Source of the DNA: Mytilus trossulus
Taxonomy: Eukaryota
DNA: 64,000 bases
NCBI RefSeq assembly: GCF_036588685.1
Contig: NC_086382.1
Span: 39,060,001 to 39,124,000, forward strand
Direction: 5' to 3'
Part shown: in pieces, positions 30,841-62,712 of the stretch
Layout of the letters: each line of letters opens with the position of its first letter
How positions within the stretch are numbered: the stretch's first letter is position 1
Position numbers and translations under genes: made by a program
Notes under the pieces: generated by a model
What the model was told of the DNA's origin: nothing
Databases searched by the model: none
Seen by the model: the letters and a program-made list of their open reading frames with translations, nothing else

Positions 30841-32040
30841 ATGTACAAAATCAAAAGGACAAACGAATACTCAACATATACGGTAGATTCTGATACTAGT
30901 AGTGATGATGATTACATTGAAGATGAACAAAGCTTGAAAAGCTATCCTCAACCAAGACGCGCAATGTCGGTAGTGACAACTAGGTCAGCTCCTCAACAGC
31001 GTCATAACAGAATTATTAAAAGGTATGTTGCTCCTCGAAAGAAAGAACCAGCAGGAGACCGCATTATGTATCCATCAAATCGATGCGTCAGAAGTCTTAA
31101 TTTGAAAACGGAAAATGAAGCTGTTCTTTCCTCTGTTTATTTCAGAAATAACGAACACAGTAAAGTCAAGGTTATTCGATCAGAACCTATAAATAAACGG
31201 ATTAATGCAGCATGTTATTCGTCTCGAAAAAAGAAACCCGAAAAACTTACATATTTGTCACCGCCATTGCGATGTATTGCCAGGGTAAATTCGGGAAGTA
31301 AAAGTGTAACTGGATCTTCAACTGCTTACAGTGACAGCACTCATACCAAAGTGAGAACCAAACGGTGTGAAAGAGGTATTTATAGTTTTTCAAATGTATC
31401 GCAAAGACCCATCGTACCTTATAACATGATTGGACAATCGGCTGACAGCTTCGCAAAACGGATGAGGGTGAGTGAAGTTGTATCATCTTTAAAAGACCAA
31501 ACGGTTGCCAAGGTGGTCGGTAGACGCGATCATATTCTTCAAGATAAGATAGAATGCGTTTCTCGGAAGCATGTTTCTGGCTGTAAAAAACAGGGAAGCG
31601 ATTTAAACCATCAAACTCAAGAGGTAATCAAGAACAATTCTGGTGTAAATTTTATCCGACCCTATAGTGAACTTTATGAACTAAATGATCAAGTTGAGAA
31701 CGAAGGTGATTCAGCCGAAAAACCGAAATCTTTGAACAGAATAAATCAGAAAAAGTCTTTCGAAAATTACTCGTTTTCAAGTTCGAGTGAGAGTTCCAAA
31801 TCAATTAAAAATGATGGAAATACGACAGACAGCTCTTCAAATCTACATAGCGTTTTGTATAAAACCACGTCTACGAGGTCAAATCAGACCAAATGTCTTC
31901 ACGTGGACTACTCGAAAGTGTTAAAATCCAGGGAGAAAAAAGAAGAAGGACCTGATAACATTGAAGTTAAGATATATTACGATGATGATTTTGAATCTAT
32001 ATATCCTAAGCTACGTAAAACAAAGTCCAAAGTTAGTTGA
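30841..32040 (+). CDS. Ser/Arg/Lys-rich low-complexity protein, family S copy 1 (truncated before the half-GAR exon)
   Basis: 399-aa ORF; shares RIMYPS, F.RPY.E, S.QT.C..VDYSK and PDNI.VKIYYD with 50071; homology continues out of frame to ~32128 and the donor is lost. Confidence 0.7.
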   Translation: MYKIKRTNEYSTYTVDSDTSSDDDYIEDEQSLKSYPQPRRAMSVVTTRSAPQQRHNRIIKRYVAPRKKEPAGDRIMYPSNRCVRSLNLKTENEAVLSSVYFRNNEHSKVKVIRSEPINKRINAACYSSRKKKPEKLTYLSPPLRCIARVNSGSKSVTGSSTAYSDSTHTKVRTKRCERGIYSFSNVSQRPIVPYNMIGQSADSFAKRMRVSEVVSSLKDQTVAKVVGRRDHILQDKIECVSRKHVSGCKKQGSDLNHQTQEVIKNNSGVNFIRPYSELYELNDQVENEGDSAEKPKSLNRINQKKSFENYSFSSSSESSKSIKNDGNTTDSSSNLHSVLYKTTSTRSNQTKCLHVDYSKVLKSREKKEEGPDNIEVKIYYDDDFESIYPKLRKTKSKVS

Positions 32041-32249
32041 TGATAGAGATTCCATACAACCCACAGTAATACAAGAACTGAAACATTTGACTTATTTGAT
32101 CGTCATATTGTACCACAACTAAAGTTAAGTAGTCAAAAAAGATGTGATACACATCCCAATGTTGTAAATTAAAATACAAAACTTTTACTATGTTTGGATT
32201 GACTTCTATATAAGTACCATCATTATCCCTTAGCTTCACGTTTGATTTT

Positions 32250-32345
32250 AAACTACTTTGATCTTAGCGTCACTGATGGGTCTTATGTAGACGAAACGGG
32301 CGTTTGGGTTTTTTTAATTATTAAGTTATAATATTGGTACATTTG
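32250..32345 (+). mobile_element. Degenerate retrozyme fragment
   Basis: gcgtca CTGATGG gtcttatgtagac GAAA cgggcgtt; core and cleavage site mutated. Confidence 0.6.
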
Positions 32346-33949
32346 ATAACTATTTGATATATTAACGATGCATAGTTAAATCTTTGTATGTTGCTTTTAA
32401 TCTATAATTTAACCATGATAATCGGTGGAGCACTTCACCTAACAATGACAGATGACAGTTTTCTGTCTGGGACCTTTAAATTTAAATGCAGTAAAAGTTT
32501 AGATGCCCCAGAAATAGAACACATATCAGAGCTTACATGTCATGGCATGGTTTAATAATGTTATGCTATGGAACAGAGAGTTTATAACGAAAGTTTAAAT
32601 GTTTAACGAAGGCTTTGATAATTTGGTTGATCACCGACATGAAATGTGTGTGTCAGAAATGACAACGTTCAGGTATATATTCAAATTGTTGTACCGGTAG
32701 TGACAAAATAATCCGTTTTTTCTCGACTCTGGTCATCTTTAAATGTAACCTATTACTTTCATTGTAGTTGCATGAGCACCATCGTTTGATCACAGTCTGC
32801 CTACAAGTCCGGGGCTCATGAGTTCAATTATTGTTTTTTATGGGTTTTGTGTTCCTCAGTCTAAAGTTTAACTGTGTAGTGTACAGTACTTTAGTATGCC
32901 AATCATTTTGTTTTTTGCAATTTTATGGTTATTTTTTGTACCCTTGTTGTATACTCTCGACTTTTCTGAATGTTTTTATGTTATCAATTTCCTAGTATCT
33001 TGGTTTGTGTGTTTCTGCTTGAGTAAGAATGTTACACAATGTGGAGTTCTGTACCACTAATAATTACATCATATGGATTATGTCTGTTTGTTTTGCTTAC
33101 ACATTGTTATAAATATAGTGCAAATGTCAACATTAGAAAATGTATGTACCAAGTCAGGAATATAACAGTTGGTAACCATTCGTTTGATATTTACAATCTG
33201 ATAGGGACTTTCCAATTTGAATTCCCTCGGATTTTGGGTTGGTTGTTTATGTTACTTTTCCCATACTTCTCTTGTTCACTAACACAGCAGTTAAATAGTC
33301 TATCTAACTTGGCATGATCAGCTATCATACCATATTCAAAGTTAAAAAAAACAACCGATTACCAGTTTTCAGTTCACATTATTATACACGTATATCTATA
33401 ATGTGAATACAAATACGGAGCTGTGGTAAGACTGCTAATCAGACAAATATATACTAGAAACTGAGCGACGTCGTTATAAGAAATATTTTGTCATCGTACG
33501 GCCACCAACGTCCAATAAGCAAAACAGTATAGTTAGCTATACCCTTTACAATATATTTGAAGGAGTACCAAAAATTTAAAGAAAGTTATGGTCACCCTTA
33601 TTTACGACTTTGATACACAATCCAAATTGAAAAAGCCAAAAAAAAAAAAATCTATGAATTGACTCTGTCTCCGGAAATAACTTTTGCGACTTTCTGTATA
33701 GTAGAAAGAAGAAAAAACTGGTCACAAATCTTAATTTTTTTTTCAAAAGAAATATTCTTTTTGAAATCTTCACTTTGGCAAAAATCTACATGTGTGTTCA
33801 ATATTACAATTTTGAAATTAGGGATAAGCCTTAAGGCTGAGTTGCATTATCAATTTATTTCCAGTAACTTAATTACACATAACATTAACCGTTGCAGATA
33901 TGTAGCAAGGAAAATAATCAAAATATTTAGTTTTAAAATTCTAAATACA

Positions 33950-34135
33950 CTGATCATAGATACCAGGATTAAACTTTGTATTTACGCCAGACTCGCATTC
34001 CGTCTACAATAGACTCGTCAGTGACGCTCGAATCCAAAAAAGTTGAAATGACCGAAAAAAGTACGAAGTTGAAGAGCATTAAGGACCAAAAATCCTAAAA
34101 GTTTTTCCAAATACAGCTAAGGTAATCTATTCCTG
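33950..34135 (-). mobile_element. Retrozyme-family partial copy with a mutated hammerhead
   Basis: Minus strand gcgtca CTGACGA gtctattgtagac GGAA tgcgaGTC tggcgt; flanks match the array unit. Confidence 0.75.
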
Positions 34136-34275
34136 TTCAAATAGTCAGCTGTCAATATTTCACGATTGCTTTTCTTTGCATTTTACTTATCTCATGCTCT
34201 GAATATAACTGGTTCAGTCGGGAAACTAGAGAATACATATCTTATCAGTATTTTTCAAATCGTTCATTCTTAATC

Positions 34276-41328: not shown

Positions 41329-42546
41329 ATGATCAAAGTCATAAGGACAACTAACTTTCCAACATATGCGGGTAATTCTCTTAGTGACGATTATAACAAT
41401 GAATATGAACGAGTTTTGTACAGCTACCCTCCACAGAGGCGCATTATAAGGATGGTGCCAATAAGGAAATTCCCCGACCGTGATGATATAATTCACAAAG
41501 GATATAATGCTTCTGCAAGGAAAGAACCCAAAAGAGAACGTATTATGTATCCTTCAAGAAGATTAGTCAGAAGGATTAATTGTGAAGCCGACAGTGAAAC
41601 TGGATCTTCTTCTTCTGATTTTGACAGAGATTATAAAGTCCAGGCCATTCGATCAAAGCCAAGAAATGAACGGGTTAAAATCCTTAATTTGCAGAGGAAA
41701 AATGAGTTTGAAAAAAAATCATATGTGTCTCCATCCTTGATCACCAAGGTAAAATCGAGAAGTGGGAGTGAAACTAAATCATCACGTGATGACAGTGATA
41801 GTATGCACACCAAAGTTCAGGAAAAACGGTTCAAACAAATAAGTGAAAGGTTTCGAAATTCATCTCCAAGAGACAGCACGCGTAAAGTCATTGGGAAACC
41901 TTCTGATAGCATAGCAAAATGGATTGAAGTGAGTGAAAAGTTGATTTCTTCAAAAGAACATAATGTTGTTAAGGTCAGCAATAGACACAATCATCATAAT
42001 AAAAAAAGGAAAGAGAGGTTTTCACGAATGGGAGTTCACAGGGGCCATCAACAAAGAAACAACGTGACCCATCAAACCAAACTGACAATCGGTAAAAATA
42101 CTGGTTTAACTTTCATCCGACCCTATAATGAAGTTTGTGGAAACAACGGAGTAATCGAGACAGAGGAAACTTCATCAGAAAATCATCAATCTTACTCGAA
42201 CTCAATTAAAAGGAACGAGACTTTAGAAAGTTATTCGTATACAAGCTTTAGTGAAAGTTCCGAATCAGAAATAAGCGAGGATAATACAACTAACAGCTCT
42301 AAAAGTCAGCAGCATGACAAAAATAAAATCAAGTTTTCAAGGTCAAATCAGACAAATTGTGTTCTTGTTGACTATTCGAAGCTTCTCAAGTATAGGGATG
42401 GCATAGTAAAACCACTTCCTAGAGATACAAAGATGAAAAACACGTTAGAGGAAACATACAACATCAAAGAAAACTTAAGAATTGATTCGGAAATGAGGAA
42501 AATAGCTGAAAGACGTAGTCAGTTAGAAGTATGGACAGAATACTAG
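41329..42546 (+). CDS. Family S copy 2 (405 aa; C-terminus frameshift-truncated relative to 50071)
   Basis: Collinear with 50071 up to RR.QLEVWT; degenerate homology continues to ~42705 (tattacgatgataatttt). Confidence 0.7.
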   Translation: MIKVIRTTNFPTYAGNSLSDDYNNEYERVLYSYPPQRRIIRMVPIRKFPDRDDIIHKGYNASARKEPKRERIMYPSRRLVRRINCEADSETGSSSSDFDRDYKVQAIRSKPRNERVKILNLQRKNEFEKKSYVSPSLITKVKSRSGSETKSSRDDSDSMHTKVQEKRFKQISERFRNSSPRDSTRKVIGKPSDSIAKWIEVSEKLISSKEHNVVKVSNRHNHHNKKRKERFSRMGVHRGHQQRNNVTHQTKLTIGKNTGLTFIRPYNEVCGNNGVIETEETSSENHQSYSNSIKRNETLESYSYTSFSESSESEISEDNTTNSSKSQQHDKNKIKFSRSNQTNCVLVDYSKLLKYRDGIVKPLPRDTKMKNTLEETYNIKENLRIDSEMRKIAERRSQLEVWTEY

Positions 42547-44355: not shown

Positions 44356-44484
44356 ATGGCTGCATCGAGACACAGCTTTTCTACAGTTAAAGATAACGCA
44401 TTTCCTCCATGCAAATGTTACCAGTATTTGAGCAAGAAAAGAAGCGGCCAGTATTTTCTAATGGGAAAATTATTACATATAAAG
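44356..44484 (+). CDS. Stand-alone GAR (GAS2) domain protein, exon 1
   Basis: MAASRHSFSTVKDNAFPPCKCYQYLSKKRSGQYFLMGKLLHIK matches the GAS2 PPCKC...G.Y..G.K.L.IR half; donor AAG|GTATGT, phase 0. Confidence 0.75.
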
Positions 44485-46540: not shown

Positions 46541-46765
46541 GTGAATGAAAAGTCAGAAAAACATCACGTGATGGTTAAAGTTGGTGGTGGTTGGGAGACA
46601 CTGGAGGACTATATGGACCGTCATGTGCCATACAAATTCAAGATAGCAGAGTATAAACGGCCATTATATAGTAACACGTGTGAAGTTAAAGACATATATC
46701 TTGGAATTAAATCACATTATAAGTCCTGGAACCAATCAAAACAGTTTTATTATTCACTATTTTGA
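46541..46765 (+). CDS. Stand-alone GAR domain protein, exon 2 (117 aa total)
   Basis: Acceptor ttttgcAG at 46539-46540, phase 0; HVMVKVGGGWETLEDYMDRH is the GAR signature; tail DIYLGIKSHYKS. Confidence 0.85.
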   Translation: MNEKSEKHHVMVKVGGGWETLEDYMDRHVPYKFKIAEYKRPLYSNTCEVKDIYLGIKSHYKSWNQSKQFYYSLF

Positions 46766-47455: not shown

Positions 47456-47579
47456 GAACTATTTTACTCAATATTGTTTATGCTAACACAAGTTTGAAAC
47501 GAATTAACCTCTTAATTTTGCAATGTGTAGGCCATCAAGCAGTTTACAAATAATTAAAAATCTTACACAGTTATTATCA

Positions 47580-48200: not shown

Positions 48201-50070
48201 TTGTTTGTACTCACAATCACACGCCACACATGGCTCAGCTCTTGGTAATCCTTCCAAAGCACATTTTTGCTGGGTTCATTCATGTTGCTCAGTCTTGTCT
48301 ATAGTACTATTGTATATCTGTTGGTTTATTTCTTTTGTAAGCCATAGCATTGATAGTCGATTTTTTCGACTTTAAATTTAATGTCACTCTGGTGTCTTTT
48401 GCTATTCTTCTACAAATACAGTGTAATTCATCTGATTGTTAGAAAAATATAAACGTTTTAAGCCGGTGACTGTATGTTGAAAATGTGAACATCATTTCCT
48501 GCAAACTAAAATTTCACGTGCTCATAACACGTATAGAGAATTCTGTTAACAGTTCACTAGAACATTTGATTTGTGAAACACCTAATGTACACAGACTAGT
48601 GTGTACATTTTTACGCTATTAGATATATGGCGTAGGGAAAATGCGGTTAAAATAAAAGAGCTAATTAGCCTGTGTTTTCTTGGAAGTAAGGAGCGAAGTA
48701 ATAAACTAGACATCCTGCTCAGTGTGTAGGTCTTGTACAAAATAGTGATCATACTCATATCAAATAAGCTTTATTCTCGTCCTTATATGTATATAATGTT
48801 CGTCAAACGTCAATTCATTATCTTCAAAAGATAACACAAGTATGAGATTCTACAAACTTTCTTTTTAATGTATTTGCCATCATTCAGGTAATCACAGTTT
48901 CATACATATGTTCGTCTCCATGAATTACCACGCAAAAGATCATAAATATATTGAGTTTAATATGATATGTCTGTACTCGATACAGTTACATTTTTATATG
49001 TTTAATGCAAGGGTGACCAAACTTTTCAAATATTAACAATTGAACTTCTGAGAGTGGGGAAATATTGTATTGCACGAAATTTGGTGGTTGAATCTGTTTC
49101 TCTCCTAATTTTAGACGATATTTAGACACTTTTTATCTTTCTTTTTCTATTCTCTGCAGAAGGTGTGTCCTTATTATGTGACGCCATTGGCATAGAAGCA
49201 TTTGTCGTGAAGTCACACAGAAAAAGTTAGAGGCAAGCAAGGACATTTGATGTGAACATTGAACATTGAAAAATGACGAATAAAAAATTTTGAAAAAAAA
49301 AACATGCTGATAATAAAAACATAATCCACCAGTTTTTTAAAATTAGGTGAAAATTTGACCAACGGTAATAACCGATTAACTTAATTTATATAAACATATA
49401 TATAATTAAAAATAATTCAACGATCAAACATTAGTTTATTAAAGGTAAATAATATAAAAGCTTGCAGTTTAATACTCGGTTCATTTAAATAAAATATTAT
49501 ATTTCTTCCAACAAAGAGACTAGGCAAATTTTAATCTATATTAAATATATATTATATCCTTTATTTGACATAAAAGATAATGACCTAAAGACATATAAAG
49601 TTTACTACACATCCATTTATTACAAAGCCGATTTAAAACTATAGTTGATGTTTGAAACAAACCACTGCATAATCTGATATATATATAGTGTTTCAGTTTG
49701 ATCATAATTTGGTATCATGCCAACATTCTTCAATACACTCGGGGACGGTATATTTACCAGTACAATTAGTTGTAAGCATGTCTTTTATGTAATGTTGAAA
49801 GACAAATAAAACGTCAATATTACAATTTAAATTGACAATAGACAAAACAAATATTGAATATTGGATTTTCGAAATAACGATCAGTTTTGAGGTCTGTCTG
49901 TACATCTTCGTAGACGAGTGCCATTATTGAGTCTAAATTGTTCGAAAACAGCAGAGACCTACCGATAATTCGTACTTTCAGAAGCTATGGCCACCTTCTT
50001 CCAGGTAGAATGGCTAGCTAAAAAAGATATCGAACCAATGTAAAGCTATAAACTATCACCATTCAGTAAT

Positions 50071-51720
50071 ATGTACAAAGCAAAAAGGATACATAAATAT
50101 TCACCAGATACCGGTGATCCATATAGTGATGATAACTATTATTCAGAAGAAGAGGAAAGAGTTTACTACAAGTATCCTCAAAGAAAACGCTTGATAAGAT
50201 TTGTACCGTCGAGGATAGTTTCCGAACAGCATGATGGCAGAATTATGAAAAGGTATAGTGTGCGCCAAAACGAACCAGAAAGAGACCGCATAATGTATCC
50301 GTCATCTCATATCGTCAGGGAAACAAATTCTGAAACCGAAAGTGAAACTCGATCTTCTTCTGATTATTACAGAGATAATACAGTTTATAAAGTACATGTC
50401 ATTCAATCGAAGCAAACTGAAAAACGGAATAATAAAACACCAAATTTGAATAAAAAAGAAGAACTTGAAACATATTCGTATTCTTCTCCATCTTTCCGAT
50501 TTGTTCGCAGAGAAAATTCGGAAAGTGAAAGTGAAACCGAATCTTCTACAGATTACAGCAATCAAACTAAACAACAGATGCAAAGGTCGAAAATGGAAAC
50601 TGCGAGGTTTTCAAATTCATCCCCAAGACGTGTCGTAACTTATCACATCATTGATGATCCGTCTGACCGAAAAATAGAGCGAAATAAATCGAGTAAACTT
50701 GGTTCTTTCAATAAATCCGATAATATTGTTCGACGTAGGATAGAAACTCTACCTCGAACTCGACATCATGAAGGTGAAAAACGAAGACATAACTTGCCCT
50801 ATCAAACTAAACCTGCATTGAATAACAATGATGGTGTTACCTTTCTCCGACCCTATAGAGAAATTCGTAGACAGAATGAGATAAGTGAGAACAAGAGGAT
50901 TGTCAAAAATATACAACAACCTTTCCCTAACAGAAGAAAATCGAAAGGGTCTTTTGAAAGTTACTCGTATACAAGTTCAGATGAAAGTTCTGAATCAGAT
51001 AGTAGCGATGGATATACAACTGACAGTTCTGCAATTGAACAAAATGACAGATATAATGCTCAGTCTACGAGATCAACACAGACAGAATGTCTTCTCGTTG
51101 ATTATTCGAAAGTGGTAAAATCAAGAGAAGAGCAAAGAAAATACGAACAAGAACGACGACGACATGCACAGGAAAGGCATATTGTAAGTTTAGTTCAAAA
51201 TGAAGTTAACAAACCACGTTTAAACTCGAACATTACCGGCGATTCACGTATAACCGCTACTATCGAAAACCCAGCAAAACCACTTCCTAGCAATACAAAG
51301 GGGACAAGCACATTGGATGAGCAAGAGAAACTAAACGACATTAAGGAGAACGTTAGGATTGATTTGGAAAAGAAGGAAAAAGATGAGAGACGCAATCAAT
51401 TAGAAGTATGGACAAATCCTAAGCTCAATTCTGACAATCGGCAAACAATTTTAAATAATTATAAACAGGACCATAATGTGTATAATTTTGATGATCGTAG
51501 AAACAACTCCAAAACATTAACTGACAAGCGAGACGAAGCACCTGACAATATTGACGTAAAAATATATTACGATGAAAATTTTGAATCGATGTACCCGCAG
51601 CCACGTAAAAAAGGTTGCCAGTTAGTTTATTATATAGATTTGAGACCACCTACAGAAATAGTAGATCCGAAACCATTTGACGTATTTGAACGACGCATCG
51701 TGCCTCAACCGAAACGTAAG
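50071..51720 (+). CDS. Family S copy 3, exon 1 (618 aa with the half-GAR exon)
   Basis: 550 open codons ending at the strong donor AAG|GTAAGA (51721), phase 0; Ser/Arg/Glu-rich. Confidence 0.85.
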
Positions 51721-52116
51721 GTAAGAAATTGAAAAGAAATAATACAGATAAGATTAAAATTTAAATAGAATTTTTTTTTAATTGAATCATGAAATAACGA
51801 CTAAACCAATTTCTACAAAAAATAGTAAAAAATATATCTCATGATTTGTGCTTGTAATGTACAATACTGATGCATTGCGAGCTGCCTGCCCTTTCGGAGT
51901 ACCTGAGATGCCCCAAGTTTCCGAGTGGGTTCGTATTGCTCAGTCACTGTCTGCAATGTACCATTTTGTAGATAAAGACCAGACAATTATCAATTGAAAA
52001 TCAATTTGATCAAAAAATATTCTTAAGGCTACACACAATATGTAAGTGAGACGTTTTTGGTCCTTCGATACATTTTTAGACTTATCTGCTGTGGTAAATT
52101 CCGTACTGTTCGAATA

Positions 52117-52324
52117 CTGTGGATTCATTATTATTCGTTGGATACCAATTTTCTTGGGTTTCGAGGTTATGGGTTGTCCACGAAACAAATGTTCAACGAA
52201 ATACATATGTGTAATAGGCTTAATATACAGAGATTGTCAAAACCACGAAATCAAATATCCACGAATATGCAAGTTTTCACCAATCCACGAAAATTGATAC
52301 CAACGAACATAAATGAATCCACAG
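52117..52324. mobile_element. MITE with ~36-bp TIRs and TA target-site duplication (Tc1/mariner-like)
   Basis: TA|CTGTGGATTCATT...AATGAATCCACAG|TA; intronic. Confidence 0.85.
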
Positions 52325-53200
52325 TATTTCGCTTGCATAGTGATGCAGTCATCAATATATGTTTATTCTATGTTCAGACCATTCAGTAAAATGTATTTTC
52401 CTGTACACATTTAAAAAATATACTGAATTGTGTGAAAACCTACTGAACAACATGAACGATACGTATTGATTGTTTTCCCTAGCAAATGTTCTGAACAAGT
52501 GTGAATAAACCAAAGTTATTAGTCTTAACAGTTGTCTTATACACTGATCATGAAAAAATAATATTCAGTTGATTTTTAGCCAAAAGGCTGCATTTGATAC
52601 TCTATAATCTTGTTTGTCTTTTCGTACATTTTCTCTTTGGGTGTGTAATCGTTGTGGTTTTTTTCAACCATCCCGTCGTAGTCTTGCCTATGTCATCTTT
52701 TATATCACCAAAAATAAACAACAAATACTGAATTACAGGCTCATGACACGACAGGCACATACTTATTTACAGGGTTGTTCTTTTGGATACAAATAGAAAC
52801 ACGTCTGACAAAAAAACTGAGTCAAAGTAGACCGGTACGTATATCTCCAAATAACAAAATGACACAGAAAAAAGTACAGATTTAAGAGTATACGCAGTTA
52901 CTGATAGCTATTTCAAAGCAAATAAAAACTAATTAAAAAGCATGCACCTGAGACAACAGTATTAATCAGTACACATCCAACATTCTTCTGATTTAGAAAA
53001 GATGTCACGAATAGTCAGAAAAAAATATACACTTGAGCAACGCCAATATACGTATATTTTACATAAACGAATTTTAAATTAACCCTAAAACGCAATGCAA
53101 AGTGTCAAAAAGTAAAATTCAACCAGTATAGGAAAAACAACTTCTACTGTTATCATTGACTATAGTACGATTAATTATATTTCCACTGTAATTATTTCAG

Positions 53201-53407
53201 AAAAAACATCCCGATTATGCAGTCAAGGTTGGTGGCGGATGGAATACAATGAACGACTACATGGAAAGACATGAACCGGTGAAGAGATTCGTTTACGAAA
53301 GAGAGCATTTAAAAAACTCTGATTTACCGGAATCAAAGAAAAAGTACTATGGATTCAGATCAAATTATAAGTCACCACGACATAATCAAACTTATTGTAC
53401 TACATAA
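53201..53407 (+). CDS. Family S copy 3, exon 2: C-terminal half of GAR plus GAS2-like tail
   Basis: Not in the ORF track. Acceptor tatttcAG; KKHPDYAVKVGGGWNTMNDYMERHEP...YYGFRSNYKS...TT*; AATAAA at 53407. Confidence 0.85.
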   Translation, partial: KKHPDYAVKVGGGWNTMNDYMERHEPVKRFVYEREHLKNSDLPESKKKYYGFRSNYKSPRHNQTYCTT

Positions 53408-53919
53408 ATAAATACTACTTTTCAAGACTTAAAGTAGTACATGTTATGAAGCTTTGAGGTCCGGACCGATGTTGTTAGTCTACCACGGTACCATTTGCAA
53501 TGTATCAACTGTTTTATCGTACATGCTATTTTTTTATTAAAAATTTTTATTTTGTAACTGTGTATTTGTATTTGAGCGAAGGTTTCAACTAAGGTTTCAA
53601 CTCTTTAATTATAAGTTTGTCATATACATTTTGTAGTTAGTTGTTCTAGTGTAAATTAGTTTGGTTTTCGTGCTCCATGATATTTAATGTTTTTTACATT
53701 CATCAACGTTCTTAATTAAAGGCTAGTTTAAGTTAATACTATTTACCAAATAAAGAGTATAGCACTGATCACACGAGACAACTGATAACTATAAAAACAA
53801 AACAAACAAAAAACAAGTTGTGGTATGATTGACATTTCAACAACTCTAAACCAGAGATCAAATGACGTAGAAGTTAATAACTAAAGGTCACATAGCGATT
53901 CCGCTATTAATAGAATATC

Positions 53920-54170
53920 AGTCCTCCAGGGTTTCATCCCATCAATAGTCAGTAATTCGGTACAATTGATTATAACAAACGTTTTTTTGTAAATCATTTG
54001 AAAATATCAAGAAACTTTGCTTTTAACTTCATCAAGCAAAGTTTAACTTAGATGAATTATGCTATTCTTTTTAGTTTCTTTTTGGTCGATGGCTCTGTCG
54101 CGGTTTGGTCTTATTATTGACTTCTAAGCGTTTGGGTTTGAGGGATCCTGATGAAATCCAGAAATCCATG
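53920..54170 (+). mobile_element. Divergent, decayed retrozyme-like unit
   Basis: Patchy similarity to the array unit (cagggtttc...tagtcag; tcaagcaaag...ttagatgaatt) ending in CTGATGA..GAAA at 54148-54164 without stem II. Confidence 0.4.
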
Positions 54171-55384
54171 AAACGTGTTCAGTGTTTTTTTCAATTTTTC
54201 CTTATTTTTGTGAAAGGTTGATAATGATCTTACGCTAATAATCATTATCGCGTAAGTATGAGTGAAAATAAGTCACGCATTTTTTATATTTAATTTTCTT
54301 GAAGAGCGGAGGTCCGATAAGTCTTCAGTCTCAATTATTATGATCTAGTTGTGATATGGTTGAAATTGGTTTTAACATTTAATTATTTCAAGGTTCAAAA
54401 ATAAAATATTTCACCCCTGAGATATCTAAATATGGTAGCTACCAATGATTCTGTAAAAGAAAAGTTAATATTTAGCAAGAGAAGACAACTCTTAATAGAT
54501 TCAGTTTCGAATAACTGTATTTTTCCAATCCCCTTTATTCAAAATATATTGTCATACGCGTGTGGTTTCAGGAGATCATATTTTTGATTGTCTCATCTAG
54601 TCTTGCTTGTATTAGTTCTATCAACATGGCCGAATTTCGGATATAATTGAACAACTAGACACGAAAGAATAGTTGAGAGAAAATTATGAAAGTATGTTGT
54701 CCATAGGGTTCCACATCAATTCCTCAAATTAAGTTTGACTTGTATTTCCATGGTTGTATTATAAAAGTTGTGGAAATAAATACTAGATGCTCCAGAATGA
54801 TAGAAAAATATATGAGCACATGTTACAAGATTTTCATTCCAGAAAAACATGAAATAACCAGAATTTGAAATAAAACAGATTAATAAGAATCATTAGGAAG
54901 AAGACTTACATGTGCATGAGAAAACAATACCAGTCAAATTTTCAGAAACGATAGCTTGTAGATCTAGATTTACGTATACACACATTAAAAAGCATGTTTT
55001 ATTCAATTTTTATATTGATTCATTTGAAATTTTAAATGGAAATTTTATCTGAATAGCAACTGTATACGGATGGCTAAGTTTAAATGCATAATATCCTTGT
55101 CTATCTTTAATTTGGTACATACGTTTTGTTTGTTGTGCATAACAATGCAATGTGCCAAAACAAATTATACACTTATCGTGAAGCGGTTAATAAATGTTTA
55201 AAAAACAGGTTAAAAATTAAGGACATACTTGCTGTTAGTCTGTGTGTTAATCACAAACAAGGAAGTGATAAATTTTGGGATTAATTAAAAACAAGAATAA
55301 ACAGACAACGGTGAAGTGAAAGAGAAAAGTGGAAAGTATGAACAATCGAAAAACCAGGGATATCTTGGTGTTATTTGTTGTACC

Positions 55385-56365
55385 ATGGGGAATGTGCAGG
55401 AACCATCTTCATTAAGAACTGCTGAACACTCAGATCTAAAGGAAGTAGGTCAAAACAACAACAACAATTCAGATCACAAGAATGAAGAATGTAGAGAGTC
55501 AGTGTCAAGCTCAAAAGACGAATGTCATCAAAGTAGTGTAAGTTTAAAAAAGCGTGAACAACCTACAAAAGATATTTTTCAAACATCAGAAACTATTGAA
55601 GAGCACCCTGAAAATTTAGAAAATGTATTACATGATACAGATAATGTATCAAGAAACATAAAGAAAAAGAAAAAGAAAAAAACTAAAATACGTAGCAAAG
55701 AGGAAAATAATAAAGAACATGCTAAATTTGCAGAAACACTTATCAAGCGGCTTGAAGATGTATTAGCTAAACAAAATACCAATCAAGACCGTGATTCTAA
55801 AGAGAAACAAACAGCTGATATTGATAGGACTGTAATTAAAGAAAGTACGAAAGGCTTAATATCAAAACACAACGATTCGATGAAAGAAGTTAGAAACGCT
55901 TCCAGTACAAGCACACGAAATACACATGTACATTTTAATAACGGAAAGACAACATATTCAAGAGGAAAAGATACTTACAAAGAATCGAATGCCAGAAAAG
56001 CTGATGAAAAAAGGAGAATGCTGAAATCGCCTTATATATTACATGTTAAAGACCAATCATTTCAAAATAAAGTTCAAATACATCGGCAAGTTAAACCTAT
56101 TATCACATACGAAGAATGTATTGTTTTTGGTGGACATGAAGAATTACAAAAACCAACTCATACTCAATCGAACAAATATTTTATTATAAAATACGATTCT
56201 GATCATGAAGAATATGAAGCTAGGCCACACAATGTTTCCCGATATAATCCGTTTCTTGACAACGTAAATGAAATGAAAAATGGAAAATTTTATCGAGCAA
56301 ATTCTACTAAACAATGTCATGCTATACCAAAACGAACTGGAAGGATGTTAAGGACTGCGAATTAG
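55385..56365 (+). CDS. Lys-rich low-complexity protein, family K copy 1 (truncated paralog of 59397)
   Basis: First ATG is in ACCATGG context (frame open from 55316); shares KFAE.L.KRLE, SNKYF...YDSDH, YNPF and NGKFYRANSTK with 59397, then stops. Confidence 0.7.
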   Translation: MGNVQEPSSLRTAEHSDLKEVGQNNNNNSDHKNEECRESVSSSKDECHQSSVSLKKREQPTKDIFQTSETIEEHPENLENVLHDTDNVSRNIKKKKKKKTKIRSKEENNKEHAKFAETLIKRLEDVLAKQNTNQDRDSKEKQTADIDRTVIKESTKGLISKHNDSMKEVRNASSTSTRNTHVHFNNGKTTYSRGKDTYKESNARKADEKRRMLKSPYILHVKDQSFQNKVQIHRQVKPIITYEECIVFGGHEELQKPTHTQSNKYFIIKYDSDHEEYEARPHNVSRYNPFLDNVNEMKNGKFYRANSTKQCHAIPKRTGRMLRTAN

Positions 56366-57035
56366 AATATTTCATAAAGTAAATGTGTTGGTTGTCACAT
56401 ATGTTTAAATAATGACAAGGAGTTAGTCTGTCGGTATCTATTATATCATATGTAAGGCACAAATAACTTGATAACCGTTGTGATAGATGTATAAAAATGA
56501 TGTAGAGGACAATACGCAATTGACACACATCAAAAACAAAATGTCTTTACAATATTCTTTTTCATTTTTCCATTATAGAACAGTTTCAACAGTCTAAGTC
56601 TATTAGTTTTCATGTATAATACTGCTATTGTAATTATTCACCCCTTATTTCATTGCTTTTGTATGTACATGGTAGCATAGATCCAAATAACGCGTTCCGT
56701 GTATGTTCACTAGTGTTAATATGTCATCTGATCGAGTTAATTTATTTCATTTGATATTAATAGTGTGTCTTTCTATGTTGTAATGTTACACTATTGTTTC
56801 AGATAATGATGAAGGTTGGTAACTATTAGAACTTTCAAAAAGTAAAATCTGAACTCTAAGGAAAATTCAAAACGGAACTGTCATAAAAATCAAATGGCAA
56901 AATAAAAATCTCAAACACAGAAATCTGATGTTCATTAGTTGTCGTTTTGTTGCTGTGGTCCATAAGTTTTTCTCGCTTTTCGAATTTTATATAGATTATA
57001 CCGTTAGTTTTCCCTTTTAAATGATTTTACACTAT

Positions 57036-57440
57036 AAAAAAGAAGATGTGGAATGATTGCCAATGAGACAACTATTTACAAAAGACCAAAATGACATAGA
57101 CATTAACAACTATAGGTCACCGTACGGCCTTTAACAATGAGCAAAGCCCATACCGCATAGTCAGCTATAAAAGGCCCCGATAAGACAATGTAAATCAAAT
57201 CATGAGAAATTTAACGGCCTTATTTATGTAAAATATTGAACGAAAAACAAATATTTAACACATAAACAAACGACAACCACTGAATTTACAGGCTCCTGAC
57301 TTGGGACAGGCACATACATAAATAATGAGGCGGGGTTAAACATGCTAGCGGGATTCCGACCCTCCCCTAACCTGGGACAGTGGTATAACAGTACAACATA
57401 AGAACAAACTAGAAAAATCAGTTGAAAAGGCTTAACTCTC
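57036..57440. repeat. Abundant interspersed repeat
   Basis: aagaagatgtgg.atgattgccaatgagacaac...ggtcaccgtacggcc...ggctcctgacttgggacagg; partial copies at 33415-33545 and 53815-53895. Confidence 0.7.
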
Positions 57441-59396
57441 TTTTTATAACCCTTTATAGCTTGCTGTTCGGTGTTAGCAAATGCTCCGTTTTGAAGACCT
57501 TACTTGTACCTATACTGGTTTACTTTTTATTAATTGTGACTTGGATGGAGAGTTGTCTCATTGGTTCTCATACCACATTTACTTATATCTAATGAGAGCA
57601 ATATAAGTAGAAGTTTAAGGTAAGGACCTTAATACAAATTTAATACCGGATTTATAGCATGAATAAAGTGTTGTTTATTCTTTAGTTTTCTATGTTATAT
57701 CATGTGTATTATTGTTTGTCTGTTTGTCTTTTTCATTTTAAGCCATGGCGTTGTCAGTTTATTTTCGATTTATGAGTTTGACTGTCCCTCTGGTATCTTT
57801 CTTCCCTCTTTTTTAAGCTGTAATCTTAGTTTATAGTTTTAACTTTTCCTTATACATATGATATTTTAAATAACAAAACATATGTTTGTCATTTGGAATT
57901 ACAAATAAAACATGAATCTCTTACTGGCTAAGTCAATTGACGAGAAAATAACCTGGAATGAACAAAGGGAGGGTTGAGATCTCACAAAACCTATTAAACA
58001 TTTTCCCGCCTGTTCCAAGACAGGACCTCTGGCCTTTGTTCGTCTGGTTTTTTTTTTACTTTAGTTCATTTATACTTTGATGTTAAGTATGACTTCAATT
58101 TTCACGGAACTAGTACACAGATTTATTTAGGCATCATCTGAGGCCCACCCCCGGATGAGGAGTTTTTTTCCTTGCATTGAAGATGCATTGGTAGCCTTCG
58201 GCTGTTATATGCTATTTGGTCGGGTTGTTGTCTTTTTAACATATTCCTGATTTCCATTCTCAATTTTAAAGGATACGCGGTAAAATCAACATAACAACGA
58301 CTGTTTATGTAATAGCTGTGACAAAGATGGTCTCTGCGTATTGTGCAAGTTCATAATTTCCAAAAACTACTAAACATTATAGTATCACGTGATATGGTGT
58401 GTTTTTCAGTTACTTCAAACACAACCAGATTTTTTATAAACCTAGTCGTAAGAATTGTCATCTAATTGTAACTTGGTCTCCTAGAGGTCCGTATAATACA
58501 TGTTTTGGTTTGGGTTTTTTACTGAAGAAGAAAAAGATTTTCTTTTACAAATTTATCTTCGAATTGTTGTATTTTCACTAGTCACCTGCATTCAAAACAT
58601 TTTGTTCTGCAATGTCGGAGGAGATTTTTTAAATTGCTGAATCAAAAATAAGATATTTCTCTTCCAGTGATTTTGTAAATCCAATATAGAACCAAGTGTA
58701 TCTTAGTTGTAGAAGACCTTTCGTATATTAGTCTACCGCTATAACCCGAGTGTGGTTATATCAAGCAAAATCGTTGTCAGTTTATTTTTGACTTATATTT
58801 TTGAATGTCTCTCTGGTTTATTTCGCCTCTTTTCTGCAAATGTGGATGACAAAATTGTTTGTCACATTATTTTTCATATTTTTCATATTCTTTTTATAAA
58901 CTGTATCAATGGCAATTTGTTGACAATTTCAATATAAAGATGACATTTTCATTAAATTGCTGTAATATCAATTTTTCTTAAGATGTTTATGAAATAAGTA
59001 AAGAATTCATTATTTGTAGAAATAAGAACTCTCACCAGGATTGATATCCGATATTCAAGAATGATATCCATAATCACATGTTTCAACCTTTGTATTCTTC
59101 AAGTCAGCACTAATGCGTAAAATCAATAAGTGTTAAAAAGGTTGTGGACCAAGACGTGTTTTAGAAAAATATACAAGTTAAATATCCGTATCTATTGGCA
59201 TGTCTAAAACTTTATGTATAAATGCATTTAAAGGTATGCATTCTTTTGTTCTTACATTGATTATTTTCAAATATCAAATGAAAATGTTATCTGAAAGAAA
59301 ACGTATTAAGATTATTAAGTTGTTTAAATGCATTTAATAACACAAGATTATTTCAATATTTGATTATACATTTGATAAATTGTGCATTGAAATTCA

Positions 59397-61970
59397 ATGT
59401 ACCATAGAAATTCTGCACTTGACGTCAAAGGATTACAAGTAATGCCAGTAGAAAAGGGAACAAATCGACATTCAAATCATAAAGCTACTATTGATTCAAT
59501 TTGGTGTGAAAATTGTAAAGATAGGGAAATCACTAATATTGGAACATATGTAATACCAAAATCAACAAACCAAAATATGACGAATAGTGAAAAGTCGGGA
59601 AATGAGGGAATATTTCTGGATAGTATTCGTTGCAGCAGTGGCAAAGTTCATGAACTATCATGCGTTGGAACTGCTGATCACTCAGGTTCAAAAGGAGAAC
59701 AAAACAAGAAAGACCAAATGGATAATTCAGAAAACAAGAGTGAAAAAAGAAGAAAACCCGTGACTACTTCAAAAGATAAACCTCGCCAACTTACTAAAAA
59801 TATTTTATCAGAAACTACAAAAAAACAATTGCAAAATTTGCAAAATATATCAAACGATACAGAAGATATGTCAGCTGAGAAAAAGAAAAAGAAAACTAAA
59901 AAACATAAAAAGGAAAGGAAAGAGTTAATTAGTGCGGAACAAAATGTGAAATTTGCTGAAATACTGAGAAAGCGACTTGAAAGCGAATTGGCTAGACGAA
60001 ATGACAATCATGTTGTTGATAATTACACAACTGTTTGTAAGGATGAAAACATCGAGGTTAAAGGCAAATTGGTAATAGATATGAAAAACGATTTATCTAA
60101 ACACAAAACATCAAAAGATGTAAAGACTGATAAAGTAACGATAACGAACACAATGAAGACATACCATAGCAGCGAACGTTATACAAATAAGGATAATGAG
60201 AGTAAGCAGATGCCTAAATCGGCAAATCAAATGCATCTTAAAGATAGAATCACACCTCGTAGTGAAACTGAGCCGAAATCCGCAAACAAAATGCATCTTA
60301 AAGATAGAAACACACCTCGTAGTGAAACTGAGCCGAAATCCGCAAACAAAATGCATCTTAAAGATAGAAACACACCTTGTAGTGAAACTGAGCCGAAAGT
60401 CGCAAACAAAATGCATGTTAAAGATAGAAACACACATCGTAGTGAAAATGAGCCTGAATCCGCAAACAAAATGCATGTTAAAGATAGAAACACACATCGT
60501 AATGAAACTGAGCCGAAATCCGCAAACAAAATGCGTGTTAAAGATAGAAACACACATCGTAGTGAAACTGAGCCGAAATCCGCAAATAAAATGCATGTTA
60601 AAGATAGAAACACACATCGTAGTGAAAATGAGCCTGAATCCGCAAACAAAATGCATGTTAAAGATAGTAACACACATCGTAGTGAAAATGAAAAGCAGTC
60701 AAAAAGTAAAGCCAAATACACTTCCGAAGAGACACTGGTCAAAGATATTTATAAACAACCAAGGAAACCAACACGTATAAAATCGAACAAATATTTTAAA
60801 TTAAGATACGATTCTGATCATGACGAAAATGAGGGTAGGCCAAGAAAATCCTCTCAATACAATCCTTTTCCTGTTAATGAAATGATAAACGGAAAATTTT
60901 ATCGAGCAAATTCTACAAAAACGTCCCATTCTACCTTAGAACAAAGACACGTGTATAGGTCAGTGTCTAATGCATCTGTTTTCTCAAGCTCAATAGAGGT
61001 AACTGAAGAGTCTCCAGCAAATTTGTATTCTTCATATCAGAATATTCTCTTTCACTCAAACACAAAAGATGAATTGTATCGGCAAATGGGAAAGAAACAC
61101 CAGTTTTCTCATGTTCATGATCGAGGCGACAAAATCGAAGGGGTTCAAAATGAACCAAAAGTAAATGCTAACAAAACTCGCTTGAGTCATACCACTAGTA
61201 AAGACAATATGACAAAAACGAACGCGAATATTAGAAACCCCACTGACAAAAATAGCAGAGATAATAATTCACGAGCGCCTAAGCCAAGATACAACGCCTG
61301 GACTATAGAATCAACAAACGAACAAGTAGCAAATGTAGATGCAAGGAACAATACATTCAGAGAAAAAGTTATCAAAGCAGCACGTCGTCCTCAAAATCGT
61401 TGCTTTTATTCAGAGGATGACGATAAAGACTTAATTTTAATAATGGTACAAGATGAAATTCAAAAACAGTACCAAAGAATAAAAGAAGTTCGTATCAAGA
61501 ATGAATTAAACCAAAACGACAGACAACAAGAACAAAACGAATCAGACAATAGAAATAAAAAGAACATGAAAAGGGATTCCAAGGACCCATTTTGGGACCG
61601 TAGTAAAAATTGTAGTGCCTATAAAGATGATACAGATGTTTATTCATTCAGCAGAGAAAGTGACGAATTGCAAAGGTTAAAAGTTGATACTGCGAAAACG
61701 GACAAAAAGGCAAAGAAGAGCAAGTTCATTAACGAGACATTAAATAGAGTTTCCAGTAAAAAGACCGAAGATTCAACAGAGGATTTGAATGATGAAAACA
61801 AAGACGTGTCTACTCCTATGGTGCATGAGTCCAAGAAAGAAGAAGACAAACTTGAGGAAAAGAAAGATATGTTACAGTCCATTGTTGATATACACGATAT
61901 TGGTGTTAATGTTGCGCCTCCACATCACGCACAACAAAAGGTGGAAAAACATTTCAGAGTACCGTCAAAG
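59397..61970 (+). CDS. Family K copy 2, exon 1 (up to 930 aa with the half-GAR exon)
   Basis: 858 open codons ending at donor AAG|GTAATT (61971), phase 0; true start codon uncertain. Confidence 0.85.
60213..60692 (+). repeat. Coding minisatellite, 8 x 60 bp (PKSANKMHVKDRNTHRSETE)
   Basis: Units start at 60213, 60273, ... 60633; near-identical. Confidence 0.95.
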
Positions 61971-62493
61971 GTAATTAAGATATAAGTACCATTTACTTCA
62001 GATGGGATATATTTTCCTTGATTTAAAAAACGAAGTTTAACATTCTTATTGAAAAATCTAAACTTATAATTCGAGTAAACGAGGTTTAACACATTCCAAT
62101 GAAGATAAACAAAAAGATAAACAATGACAGTAATCTAATTACATTTCGGTGAAAATGGCAATTCATCAAATAATAATTCCGTTGAATTTCACTTTCCTTA
62201 TCTTTTTCGTTTATTCAAATATCGTTGTGAAATAGTTGTATTAAGTATTCATGTGACATTTAAAGAATTGAAAGTCAAAATGAAAAGTCCCTAAAATCAA
62301 AATCTCACACACATCAAACGATCGGATAACAATTGTCATATTAATGACATAACACAGGCAGTTCCTTAACATGTAGAATAGTATAGTAAACCTGCTTTTA
62401 TAACTAGTCCAGGGTTTCCGCTGGCGGTCAAACATATTGACAACTTTTACATTAATAATAACCTTATACATTGTTTACATTTTCTACTTGCAG

Positions 62494-62712
62494 AAAGATT
62501 GCAACAAAGTGGTAAGGGTGGGTGGTGGATGGAGTAATATTAATGACTACTACAAAAGACATGTGCCAGTTACAAGGAGAGAATATAACAGGTCAAGCAA
62601 CTATAAAGGACGATCATACCTAAGTTTCCAGTCACATTACAAATGTCCTCCAAAACTCAAGCATCATTCAAAAGTTACTAATTCTACCAGTAGAAAAGTT
62701 ACATTAAATTAA
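62494..62712 (+). CDS. Family K copy 2, exon 2: half-GAR plus GAS2-like tail
   Basis: Acceptor ctacttgcAG; KDCNKVVRVGGGWSNINDYYKRHVP...YLSFQSHYKC; AATAAA near 62770. Confidence 0.85.
   Translation, partial: KDCNKVVRVGGGWSNINDYYKRHVPVTRREYNRSSNYKGRSYLSFQSHYKCPPKLKHHSKVTNSTSRKVTLN

What the first reader, a model, noticed from the sequence alone, without database searches (positions are those of the whole stretch)
30841..62712. GAS2-derived cluster: one mini-GAR gene and long disordered proteins capped by half a GAR domain
Seen: three paralogous terminal exons (46541, 53201, 62494), all phase 0, encode V.VGGGW....Y..RH.P plus Y.(G/S)..S.YK. One follows a 43-codon exon with the GAR N-half; two follow large single exons from two families (S, K) that look unrelated to each other and contain no CH domain or GAR N-half. 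Known: GAR is the microtubule-binding domain of GAS2 and spectraplakins and normally occurs whole, with a CH domain. Inference: the GAS2 last exon was duplicated and grafted onto lineage-specific basic proteins, giving a possibly undescribed cytoskeletal (perhaps germline/sperm) protein system.
Basis: partly seen in the sequence, partly recalled or inferred. Interest (0 to 1): 0.85.

Follow-up and report, generated by a model that had tools for sequence, protein, structure and literature searches.

The report
Mussel GAS2 offshoots with half GAR
Next to the mussel's ordinary GAS2 gene lies a cluster of expressed, conserved genes that keep only GAS2's last exon, which encodes the tubulin-contacting hairpin, one helix and the C-terminal tail. 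In two of them this exon is joined to long, basic, disordered proteins, an architecture not described in any paper we could find.

Summary
The window is Mytilus trossulus chromosome-scale contig C10.

- **The exons:** three + strand terminal exons (46541, 53201, 62494) each match only the C-terminal third of the Pfam GAS2/GAR profile. They also carry the GAS2-specific tail motif.
- **The gene models:** These are the 117-aa 'GAS2-like' protein, LOC134687321 (618 aa) and LOC134687322 (930 aa). Transcript contigs from two studies join 51720 directly to 53201.
- **No N-half:** neither the S nor the K exon holds a detectable GAR N-half or CH domain.
- **Origin:** a bona fide GAS2 gene (CH + GAR + tail) sits 25 kb upstream on the same strand. 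The genome holds exactly seven tail-bearing terminal exons, all on C10.
- **Age:** the same architecture (D-type) occurs in scallops, ark clams and pearl oysters, so it is older than Mytilus.
- **Constraint:** the half-domain is the most conserved part of each protein. It keeps five of the seven residues that cryo-EM and mutagenesis tie to tubulin contact.

The best reading is a portable, zinc-free microtubule-anchoring or self-association cap on MAP-like disordered proteins. That function is inferred, not shown, and the germline or sperm idea is untested. The scan's own notes s1-826907 and s1-827540 cover the same stretch.

The parts
30841..32040 (+). S1: S-family single ORF (399 aa) with no GAR exon. 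It ends just after the 'PDNIEVKIYYDDDFESIYP' module.
   Evidence: ORF; 40% identity to S2 and S3. M. coruscus ortholog P0005 (404 aa) ends at the same place. No GGGW exon lies downstream before S2. Expression not tested.
41329..42546 (+). S2: S-family single ORF (405 aa) with no GAR exon of its own. It lies 1.8 kb upstream of the mini-GAR gene.
   Evidence: M. coruscus ortholog P0006. No M. trossulus protein model was found for it. Whether it is ever spliced to the mini-GAR exons was not tested.
44356..44484 (+). Mini-GAR exon 1: 43 codons holding the GAR N-half (CKC ... GQY ... HIK), with a phase-0 donor.
   Evidence: It is part of RefSeq protein P0164 (XP_063401976.1, 117 aa), whose Pfam GAS2 match spans profile positions 12-67.
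46541..46765 (+). Mini-GAR terminal exon: GAR C-half, tail and stop codon.
   Evidence: 36.4 bits, profile 43-67. P0164 matches at 99% identity (the first codon GTG is read as M); transcript-sized contigs of about 0.92 kb hold the 117-aa ORF, against a genomic span of 2.4 kb.
50071..51720 (+). S3 large exon: 550 codons, basic and disordered. It includes a conserved pre-terminal module (residues 481-550).
   Evidence: P0001 = LOC134687321. AF2 mean pLDDT 37, with helices at 345-379 and 416-448; pI 9.4, net charge +23; covered by transcript contigs.
51721..53200 (+). S3 intron. It contains a very high-copy repeat at about 52000-52400.
   Evidence: contigs X2 record 14 and X20 record 17 skip from 51718 to 53199. 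The intron is uncovered apart from the repeat, where word depth reaches the thousands.
53201..53407 (+). S3 terminal exon: GAR C-half (beta4, G-hairpin, beta5, alpha2), tail and stop codon.
   Evidence: 25.7 bits, profile 47-68. AF2 of this exon alone gives pLDDT 79.8; the GAR-half is 96-100% identical within Mytilus.
55316..56365 (+). K1: truncated K-family ORF (349 aa) with no GAR exon; transcribed.
   Evidence: 34-49% identity to K2; contigs of 1.4-1.7 kb from X1, X2 and X20 (shorter pieces in X3) cover 55206-55999 and run beyond.
59397..61970 (+). K2 large exon: 858 codons, basic and disordered. It holds eight copies of a 60-nt (20-aa) tandem repeat at 60212-60691.
   Evidence: P0007 = LOC134687322. 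(tandem repeat); pI 9.6, net charge +56. Atlas model pLDDT 0.43.
62494..62712 (+). K2 terminal exon: GAR C-half, tail and stop codon.
   Evidence: 21.9 bits, profile 47-67; the same junction appears in the M. edulis (P0008) and M. californianus (P0009) models; 89-94% identity against 50-69% for the body of the protein.

Best explanation
**Shown.** This is part of a two-cluster family of GAS2-derived genes on Mytilus trossulus C10.
- The parental GAS2 gene (CH domain, full GAR and tail) lies 25 kb upstream of the window.
- The mini-GAR gene has lost the CH exons but keeps both GAR exons.
- The S, K, D and E genes keep only GAS2's last coding exon. It is spliced at the ancestral phase-0 intron to one or a few huge exons.
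- Those huge exons encode basic (pI 9.4-9.9 in the Mytilus proteins), disordered, fast-evolving sequence from at least three families with no or only short similarity to each other (S, K, M).
- S3 is transcribed and spliced as modelled, and the K1 region is transcribed. The mini-GAR rests on transcript-sized contigs and K2 on annotation models only.
- The retained exon is the best-conserved part of each protein.

**Inferred.** The retained exon encodes beta4, the GGG 'G-hairpin', the tryptophan of beta5 and helix alpha2. This is the part of GAR that enters the tubulin intradimer groove in the GAS2-microtubule cryo-EM structure.
- It also encodes the GAS2 C-terminal tail, which in mouse GAS2 is needed for dimerisation, bundling and nucleation.
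- I propose it acts as a small, zinc-independent module that anchors the protein to the microtubule lattice, makes it self-associate, or both. That would turn the long basic tails into MAP-like microtubule-associated proteins.
- AF2 suggests the two tail strands pair with the G-hairpin strands, which could replace the missing N-terminal strands.
For: **The genes are real.**
- Spliced contigs in two runs from two studies join 51720 to 53201 with no intervening exon.
- Contigs of about 0.92 kb hold the mini-GAR ORF, and contigs of 1.8-2.0 kb hold a distant S-type ORF.

**They derive from GAS2.**
- Littorina GAS2 maps exon by exon (CH, GAR N-half, terminal) onto L018 and L019.
- The best PDB matches are GAS2 entries 1v5r and 9kbw at E 2e-7, against 1e-4 for MACF1.
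- The tail motif is shared with vertebrate and gastropod GAS2.
- The genome holds exactly seven tail-bearing exons, all on the + strand of C10.

**Only half a domain is present.**
- Pfam and my own 26-sequence GAR HMM align only from about position 41-48 onward.
- An HMM of the N-half alone scores the 60 upstream residues no better than shuffled versions of them.

**The exon is under constraint.**
- The GAR-half is 96-100% identical within Mytilus. Against a distant S-type it is 84% identical while the rest of the protein is 11-26%.
- dN/dS is 0.36-0.43 among S-type paralogs. Synonymous sites are saturated between types, yet V.VGGGW, H and P stay invariant.

**Link to mechanism (PMC12084551).**
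- R252, G254-256, W257, K266 and H267 lie in the retained half. Mutating R252, G255, W257 or K266 cut microtubule affinity 4- to 70-fold.
- The equivalent positions here are K/R/T, GGG, W, R/H and H.
- Residues 277-314 are needed for dimerisation.

**Structure and age.**
- AF2 of the exon alone gives pLDDT 79.8, with hairpin, helix and two tail strands.
- The same architecture is kept in scallops, an ark clam and a pearl oyster.
Against: - No binding data exist for any of these proteins.
- The missing N-half holds beta3 residues K237 and R242, which also contact tubulin. It also holds the CxC zinc ligands, and zinc is reported to be essential for the integrity of the GAR fold. The DPC ligands are gone too.
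- AF2 of full-length S3 gave no confident fold at the C-terminus, with pLDDT about 40.
- The confident model of the isolated exon leans on an alignment rich in full GAR domains. It found no structural match in the PDB.
- One S-type paralog group has T in place of the key arginine.
Confidence: 0.55

Rival explanations
1. The half-GAR no longer touches microtubules. The exon is kept for the GAS2 tail and the strands around it, which serve as an oligomerisation or partner-binding motif. An example would be clustering the disordered proteins or docking them onto full-length GAS2.
For: - Residues 277-314 of GAS2 drive dimerisation independently of lattice contact.
- The tail serine is invariant and its flanking aromatic positions are largely conserved across all seven exons.
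- AF2 predicts the tail as two long strands.
- The zinc site and beta3 are missing.
Against: - The most strictly conserved residues are V.VGGGW and H.P, which are the tubulin-contact elements, not the tail. Within S-type the tail is 32-39% identical against 84% for the GAR-half.
- The homodimer prediction gave no verdict, so it adds nothing for or against this reading.
Confidence: 0.25
2. The GAR domain is actually whole. The last 40-60 residues of the big exons are an N-half that has diverged beyond recognition, so nothing was split or grafted. On this view the N-half exon simply fused with upstream sequence.
For: - The 35-70 residues before the junction are well conserved in both S (86-97% within Mytilus, 61% to a distant S-type) and K (81-92%).
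- By eye there are faint echoes of the N-half (PP.., V-E-K/R, F/Y-R-V).
- In the Pinctada D-type the HMM alignment reaches back to position 35, a beta3-like 'YIFVK'.
Against: - N-half HMM scores are indistinguishable from shuffles for every S, K, D and E protein.
- There is no CxC motif.
- AF2 predicts no strands there.
- The pre-junction segments of S and K do not resemble each other.
Confidence: 0.1
3. These are decaying duplicates or annotation artefacts: transcribed but functionless remnants of GAS2 duplications.
For: - S1, S2 and K1 lack a GAR exon and look truncated.
- S1 and S2 have no M. trossulus protein model.
- The large exons are low-complexity and evolve fast.
Against: - Open frames of 550 and 858 codons are intact in three or four Mytilus species.
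- S3 is spliced in transcript contigs.
- The terminal exons are under constraint.
- The D-type is retained across bivalve orders.
Confidence: 0.05

Closest known systems
GAS2 (growth arrest-specific 2; vertebrate GAS2, and the molluscan orthologs such as Littorina XP_070190906.1 and the Mytilus gene 25 kb upstream)
   Same: - The terminal exon is homologous. It has the same phase-0 intron after beta3 and the same beta4, GGGW hairpin and alpha2.
- It carries the same C-terminal tail motif ([YF]L...S.Y[KR]).
- It gives the best PDB match (1v5r, 9kbw).
   Different: - S, K and D proteins have no CH3 actin-binding domain, no GAR N-half (CxC, beta1-3) and no DPC zinc ligands.
- In their place are 300-860 residues of basic disordered sequence.
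- The mini-GAR keeps the N-half but has no CH domain.
GAS2-like proteins (GAS2L1-3, Drosophila Pigs) and spectraplakins (MACF1/ACF7, Shot)
   Same: They hold a GAR-type G-hairpin and helix. In GAS2L proteins a long disordered region also accompanies the GAR.
   Different: - Those proteins have a complete zinc-binding GAR with DPCRC, and CH domains. Their disordered region lies C-terminal to the GAR.
- The mussel has its own copies on C8, C1 and C13. These lack the GAS2 tail, and in the spectraplakin-type genes the intron sits elsewhere.
Classical structural MAPs (tau, MAP2, MAP4)
   Same: The overall logic is the same: a long, basic, intrinsically disordered protein with a short C-terminal microtubule-lattice-binding element. 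This is an analogy of mechanism only.
   Different: There is no sequence relationship. Tau-type repeats bind along protofilaments, whereas the GAR hairpin inserts into the intradimer groove.

Membership tests
GAR / GAS2 domain (Pfam PF02187) | Match to the whole profile of about 69 positions (beta1-beta5 plus helices) | tested here: not met
   - S3, K2, D and E match profile positions 43/47-68 only.
- My own full-GAR HMM aligns from about position 41-48.
- An N-half HMM scores no better than shuffles.
- The mini-GAR P0164 does meet this feature, covering positions 12-67.
GAR / GAS2 domain (Pfam PF02187) | Score above the curated gathering cut-off (21.3 bits) | tested here: met
   - The exons alone score 36.4, 25.7 and 21.9 bits.
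- As whole proteins, P0001 scores 22.8 bits. P0007 scores 18.6 bits, just below the cut-off.
GAR / GAS2 domain (Pfam PF02187) | Zinc site formed by the N-terminal CxC and the C-terminal D-P-C (Lane 2017, as cited in PMC12084551) | tested here: not met
   - S and K have no CxC.
- All seven terminal exons read H.P followed by a non-Cys residue.
- The mini-GAR and the Mytilus GAS2 gene keep CKC but lack the C-terminal Cys (the mussel copies lack the Asp too), as do other molluscan GAS2 proteins.
GAR / GAS2 domain (Pfam PF02187) | Tubulin-contact elements: the basic residue on beta4, the GGG hairpin, the Trp of beta5 and the K/H pair on alpha2 | tested here: met
   - V.VGGGW, H and P are invariant in all seven exons.
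- The beta4 position is K or R in five exons and T in the two E-type exons.
- The position before H is R or H.
GAR / GAS2 domain (Pfam PF02187) | Binds microtubules | not testable with these tools
   This needs co-sedimentation, TIRF or cell localisation experiments.
GAS2 family proper (CH3 + GAR + C-terminal tail) | N-terminal calponin-homology domain | tested here: not met
   - There is no CH hit in the S, K or mini proteins.
- No CH hit lies within 500 kb on C10 by Pfam.
- CH exons belong only to the upstream GAS2 gene.
GAS2 family proper (CH3 + GAR + C-terminal tail) | GAS2-type C-terminal tail after the GAR (the dimerisation region, residues 277-314 in mouse) | tested here: met
   - The tail motif aligns across the seven exons, vertebrate GAS2 (P0087, P0097, P0106) and gastropod GAS2 (P0027).
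- Its dimerising function here is untested; the job gave no verdict.

The most novel reading that the evidence does not exclude
GAS2's last exon has become an autonomous, zinc-free mini-domain: the G-hairpin and helix, braced by the two tail strands. On this reading it still binds the tubulin intradimer groove and dimerises. Pteriomorph bivalves would then have reused it repeatedly, by exon shuffling at a phase-0 intron, as a portable microtubule anchor for de novo or fast-evolving disordered proteins. It would be a natural minimal GAR module and a rare documented case of a functional half-domain being shuffled.
Probability: 0.35. Interest if true: 0.7.

Novelty: new variant of a known kind. 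Interest (0 to 1): 0.5.

Why it matters
- **A minimal binding unit.** If the half-GAR cap still binds microtubules, it would define the smallest natural unit of GAR-tubulin recognition. It would also show that the zinc-stabilised N-half is dispensable when the GAS2 tail is present. That idea follows directly from the 2025 cryo-EM work and can be tested with short peptides.
- **An evolutionary example.** This is a clean, datable case of one exon, half a domain, being spread to at least three families of large exons with no or only short mutual similarity, next to its parent gene. The intermediates (GAS2, then mini-GAR, then S and K) are still present in one 114-kb stretch.
- **Bivalve biology.** It points to a set of uncharacterised, highly basic candidate microtubule-associated proteins.
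- **If the cap proves inert.** The finding then reduces to an annotated but unstudied gene family of modest interest.

Tried and rejected
- **Degenerate N-half.** By eye, the ends of the S and K exons looked like a decayed GAR N-half (PP.., VEK/R, F/Y-R-V). I rejected this: N-half HMM scores equal those of shuffles and the full HMM does not extend into that region.
- **AF2 of full-length S3.** With a 10-sequence alignment the mean pLDDT was 37, which says nothing about the C-terminus.
- **Fold searches of the exon model.** Foldseek against the PDB gave nothing below E = 5.9. VIA-align wide gave no Z of 2 or more. The model is too small for these searches to be informative.
- **Homodimer prediction of the S3 terminal exon.** It returned 'no answer' with score 0.00, which is neither support nor evidence against.
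- **ESM Atlas on the S and K bodies.** No usable hits.
- **Pfam CH search.** It missed the CH exons of the upstream GAS2 gene because they are small. tblastn with Littorina GAS2 found them.
- **Literature.** Searches by domain plus taxon and by twelve accession or locus names found nothing on this family.
- **Joining exons.** I used the database proteins P0001, P0007 and P0164, which equal the spliced models.
- **Limits of the read data.** Reads were laid on S3 and K1. The K2 and mini-GAR junctions therefore rest on annotation models and transcript-sized contigs, not on laid reads. Run metadata were coded, so tissue could not be read.


Full report
**What is there**

The window is AT-rich animal DNA (GC 0.30-0.36). 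It comes from Mytilus trossulus contig C10:39060001-39124000.

Three + strand exons begin at 46541, 53201 and 62494. They encode V.VGGGW, five residues, Y..RH.P, and 25-30 residues later Y.(G/S)..S.YK, each followed by a stop codon. GGGW occurs nowhere else in the six frames of the window. Each exon alone passes the Pfam GAS2/GAR gathering score but matches only profile positions 43/47-68 of 69.

All acceptors are clean. The three proposed donors (44484, 51720, 61970) are AAG|GTA-type and phase 0.

**Are the gene models real?**

Yes. All three spliced models are identical to RefSeq proteins:
- S3 is P0001, LOC134687321, 618 aa = 550 + 68.
- K2 is P0007, LOC134687322, 930 aa = 858 + 72.
- The mini-GAR is P0164, XP_063401976.1, 'growth arrest-specific protein 2-like', 117 aa = 43 + 74.

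Orthologs with the same junctions exist in M. edulis, M. californianus and M. galloprovincialis.

I laid Logan contigs of four runs on 50000-55999. A 604-nt contig (X2) and a 1640-nt contig (X20), from different studies, run from the S3 exon straight into the terminal exon. They map 51718 to 53199, and the two-base ambiguity is the shared AG. The intron is otherwise uncovered apart from a very high-copy repeat at about 52000-52400. No hidden exon could therefore supply an N-half.

The same runs cover the K1 ORF region, with contigs of 1.4-1.7 kb in X1, X2 and X20. The mini-GAR ORF is held by contigs of about 0.92 kb although its gene spans 2.4 kb.

The database proteins served as the spliced models. 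The K2 and mini-GAR junctions were not checked by laid reads, because only one call was available.

**Is the N-half really missing?**

The mini-GAR has it: CKC ... GQY ... HIK, with Pfam coverage 12-67. S3, K2 and their relatives do not.
- Pfam on the full proteins still aligns only positions 47-68.
- An HMM I built from 26 complete GAR domains starts aligning at position 41-48.
- An HMM of the N-half alone scores the 60 residues upstream of the hairpin no better than 300 shuffles of each segment.

This rejects my own by-eye impression of a decayed N-half.

No CH domain is detectable in these proteins. S and K exons show no similarity to each other.

**Where did the exon come from?**

Littorina GAS2 (P0027; CH, GAR and tail) maps exon by exon onto the 10-kb stretches just upstream of the window. 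The CH exons map to L018:7425-7523 and to L019:3-89, 1548-1667 and 3264-3425. The GAR N-half exon maps to L019:4626-4721, and the terminal exon to L019:5340-5525. The mussel's own GAS2 gene therefore lies 25 kb upstream on the same strand.

Its N-half exon ends in phase 0 after '...HIR'. This is the same position as in the mini-GAR ('...HIK') and at the S, K and D junctions.

Further evidence points the same way:
- The seven-exon profile matches solved GAS2 GAR structures (1v5r, 9kbw; E 2e-7) better than MACF1 (1e-4).
- The tail motif recurs in vertebrate GAS2 ('SYLVVAAHYRSKK') and in gastropod GAS2.
- A genome-wide search with the exon profile finds exactly seven tail-bearing copies, all on the + strand of C10. 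Five lie within 114 kb: GAS2, mini, S3, K2 and D. Two lie 5.2 Mb away: E1 and E2.
- The other GAR genes of the mussel (C8/C17, C1, C13) are the GAS2L or spectraplakin kind, with DPCRC and no tail.

- Downstream of the window, a gene with an M-family exon ('MAERSRS...'), small exons, an optional 314-codon cassette and a D-type terminal exon matches M. californianus 'titin-like' isoforms of 544 and 809 aa.
- D-type proteins with only the C-half occur in Ylistrum, Mizuhopecten, Pecten, Tegillarca and Pinctada.
- The second cluster joins M-family exons to S-type terminal exons.
- A tree of the 70 alignable columns is weak. It puts S and K as sisters (95/97) together with the mini-GAR. It puts the D-type clade (100/98) beside bivalve GAS2.
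- A plausible order of events is GAS2, then mini-GAR, then S and K within mytilids, with D arising earlier in Pteriomorphia. This order is inference.

**Constraint**

The GAR-half is the best-conserved part of the proteins.
- For S3 it is 100% and 96% identical to M. edulis and M. californianus, against 75-85% for the body.
- Against a distant S-type protein it is 84% identical, against 11-26% for the body.
- The K2 terminal exon is 94% and 89% identical, against 69% and 50% for the middle of the protein (residues 301-800).
- dN/dS among S-type paralogous exons is 0.36-0.43. Between types the synonymous sites are saturated, yet V.VGGGW, H and P are invariant.
- The 35-70 residues before the junction are also conserved, and this remains unexplained.

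**How it may work**

An et al. 2025 (PMC12084551) show that GAS2-GAR binds the tubulin intradimer groove through beta3, beta4, beta5 and alpha2.
- Mutating R252, G255, W257 or K266 lowers microtubule affinity 4- to 70-fold.
- Residues 277-314 are required for dimerisation, bundling and nucleation.
- R252, G254-256, W257, K266 and H267, and the whole C-terminal region, are encoded by the retained exon. Only K237 and R242 (beta3) and the CxC zinc ligands are lost.
- The mussel exons keep K/R (T in the E-type), GGG, W, R/H and H at the five retained positions.

AF2 of the S3 exon alone, with a 62-sequence alignment, gives pLDDT 79.8. It predicts the hairpin strands, the helix and two long tail strands. 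The full-length proteins are predicted to be disordered. They are strongly basic: pI 9.4 and 9.6, with net charge +23 and +56.

I therefore propose a zinc-free hairpin-helix-tail module that anchors MAP-like basic disordered proteins to microtubules, pairs them, or both. No step of this has been shown. The missing zinc site and beta3 argue against full affinity. The AF2 model leans on full GAR homologs and has no PDB match. The dimer prediction gave no verdict.

**Novelty**

I found no paper on these proteins. Databases list them as uncharacterised, 'GAS2-like', 'GAR domain-containing', or under misleading automatic names. They are a new variant of the GAS2 family rather than a new kind of system.

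The germline or sperm idea could not be tested.

Noticed in passing
L018:7425-7523 and L019:3-5525 (G000:C10:39027425-39035525): The mussel's bona fide GAS2 gene (CH exons, GAR N-half exon, terminal exon with tail) lies 25 kb upstream of the window. Like other molluscan GAS2 proteins it lacks the Cys of the DPC zinc motif; it reads HHIPK.
   Followed up: partly
L022:2506-4143 (+), just downstream of the window: A 546-codon open frame encodes another basic, repeat-containing protein ('DDDNLSVKASYAP' repeated four times). It ends in '...IPQPKYYKRKLKPK', reminiscent of the S3 junction. No GAR exon was found after it and it has no Pfam hit.
   Followed up: partly
L023:2869-4158 and L024:2763-5681; L026:8728-9690; L027:1547-1774, 4967-5473 and 9074-9277: A third big-exon family (M: 'MAERSRS...', with 'VGCQMTTNYVIQ' repeats and proline runs) is joined to D-type or S-type half-GAR exons. 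The D gene has an optional cassette exon of about 314 codons, seen in M. californianus isoforms of 544 and 809 aa.
   Followed up: partly
window 52000-52400 (inside the S3 intron): A very high-copy repeat. Contig word depth reaches the thousands in all four runs, with many different joints and loose ends. It is probably a SINE or MITE-like element.
   Followed up: no
window 60212-60691: Eight copies of a 60-nt tandem repeat (93% matches) encode a 20-aa unit ('PKSANKMHVKDRNTHRSE.E') inside K2. The copy number differs between Mytilus species (P0007 compared with P0008 and P0009).
   Followed up: partly
window 6164-6604 (+) and L021:9558-9968 (+): C1q-domain exons (Pfam C1q, E 2e-6 and 3e-7) lie between GAS2 and the derived cluster.
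   Followed up: partly
window 18681-19148 and 26520-26999 (+): Two paralogous Cys-rich open frames of about 156-160 codons ('...NMLCLP.NPEL.NRT ... DVPCALCR ... CPPYV.N.AINCVVCS') with no Pfam match.
   Followed up: no
window 481-550 of P0001 = window 51511-51720: The pre-junction module of S3 ('PDNIDVKIYYDENFESMYP...GCQLVYYIDL..PTEI..PKPFDVFERRIVPQPK') is 86-97% conserved within Mytilus. It is shared in part with S1 and the M/E family. It is not GAR-like and AF2 does not fold it. Its role is unexplained.
   Followed up: partly
P0023 and P0067 (Batillaria attramentaria, a gastropod): These are neighbouring gastropod proteins with divergent, complete GAR-like units (CKC/CRC...GGGW...) and GAS2-type tails but no CH domain; P0023 holds two such units and P0067 one. 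This looks like a separate GAS2-derived expansion.
   Followed up: no
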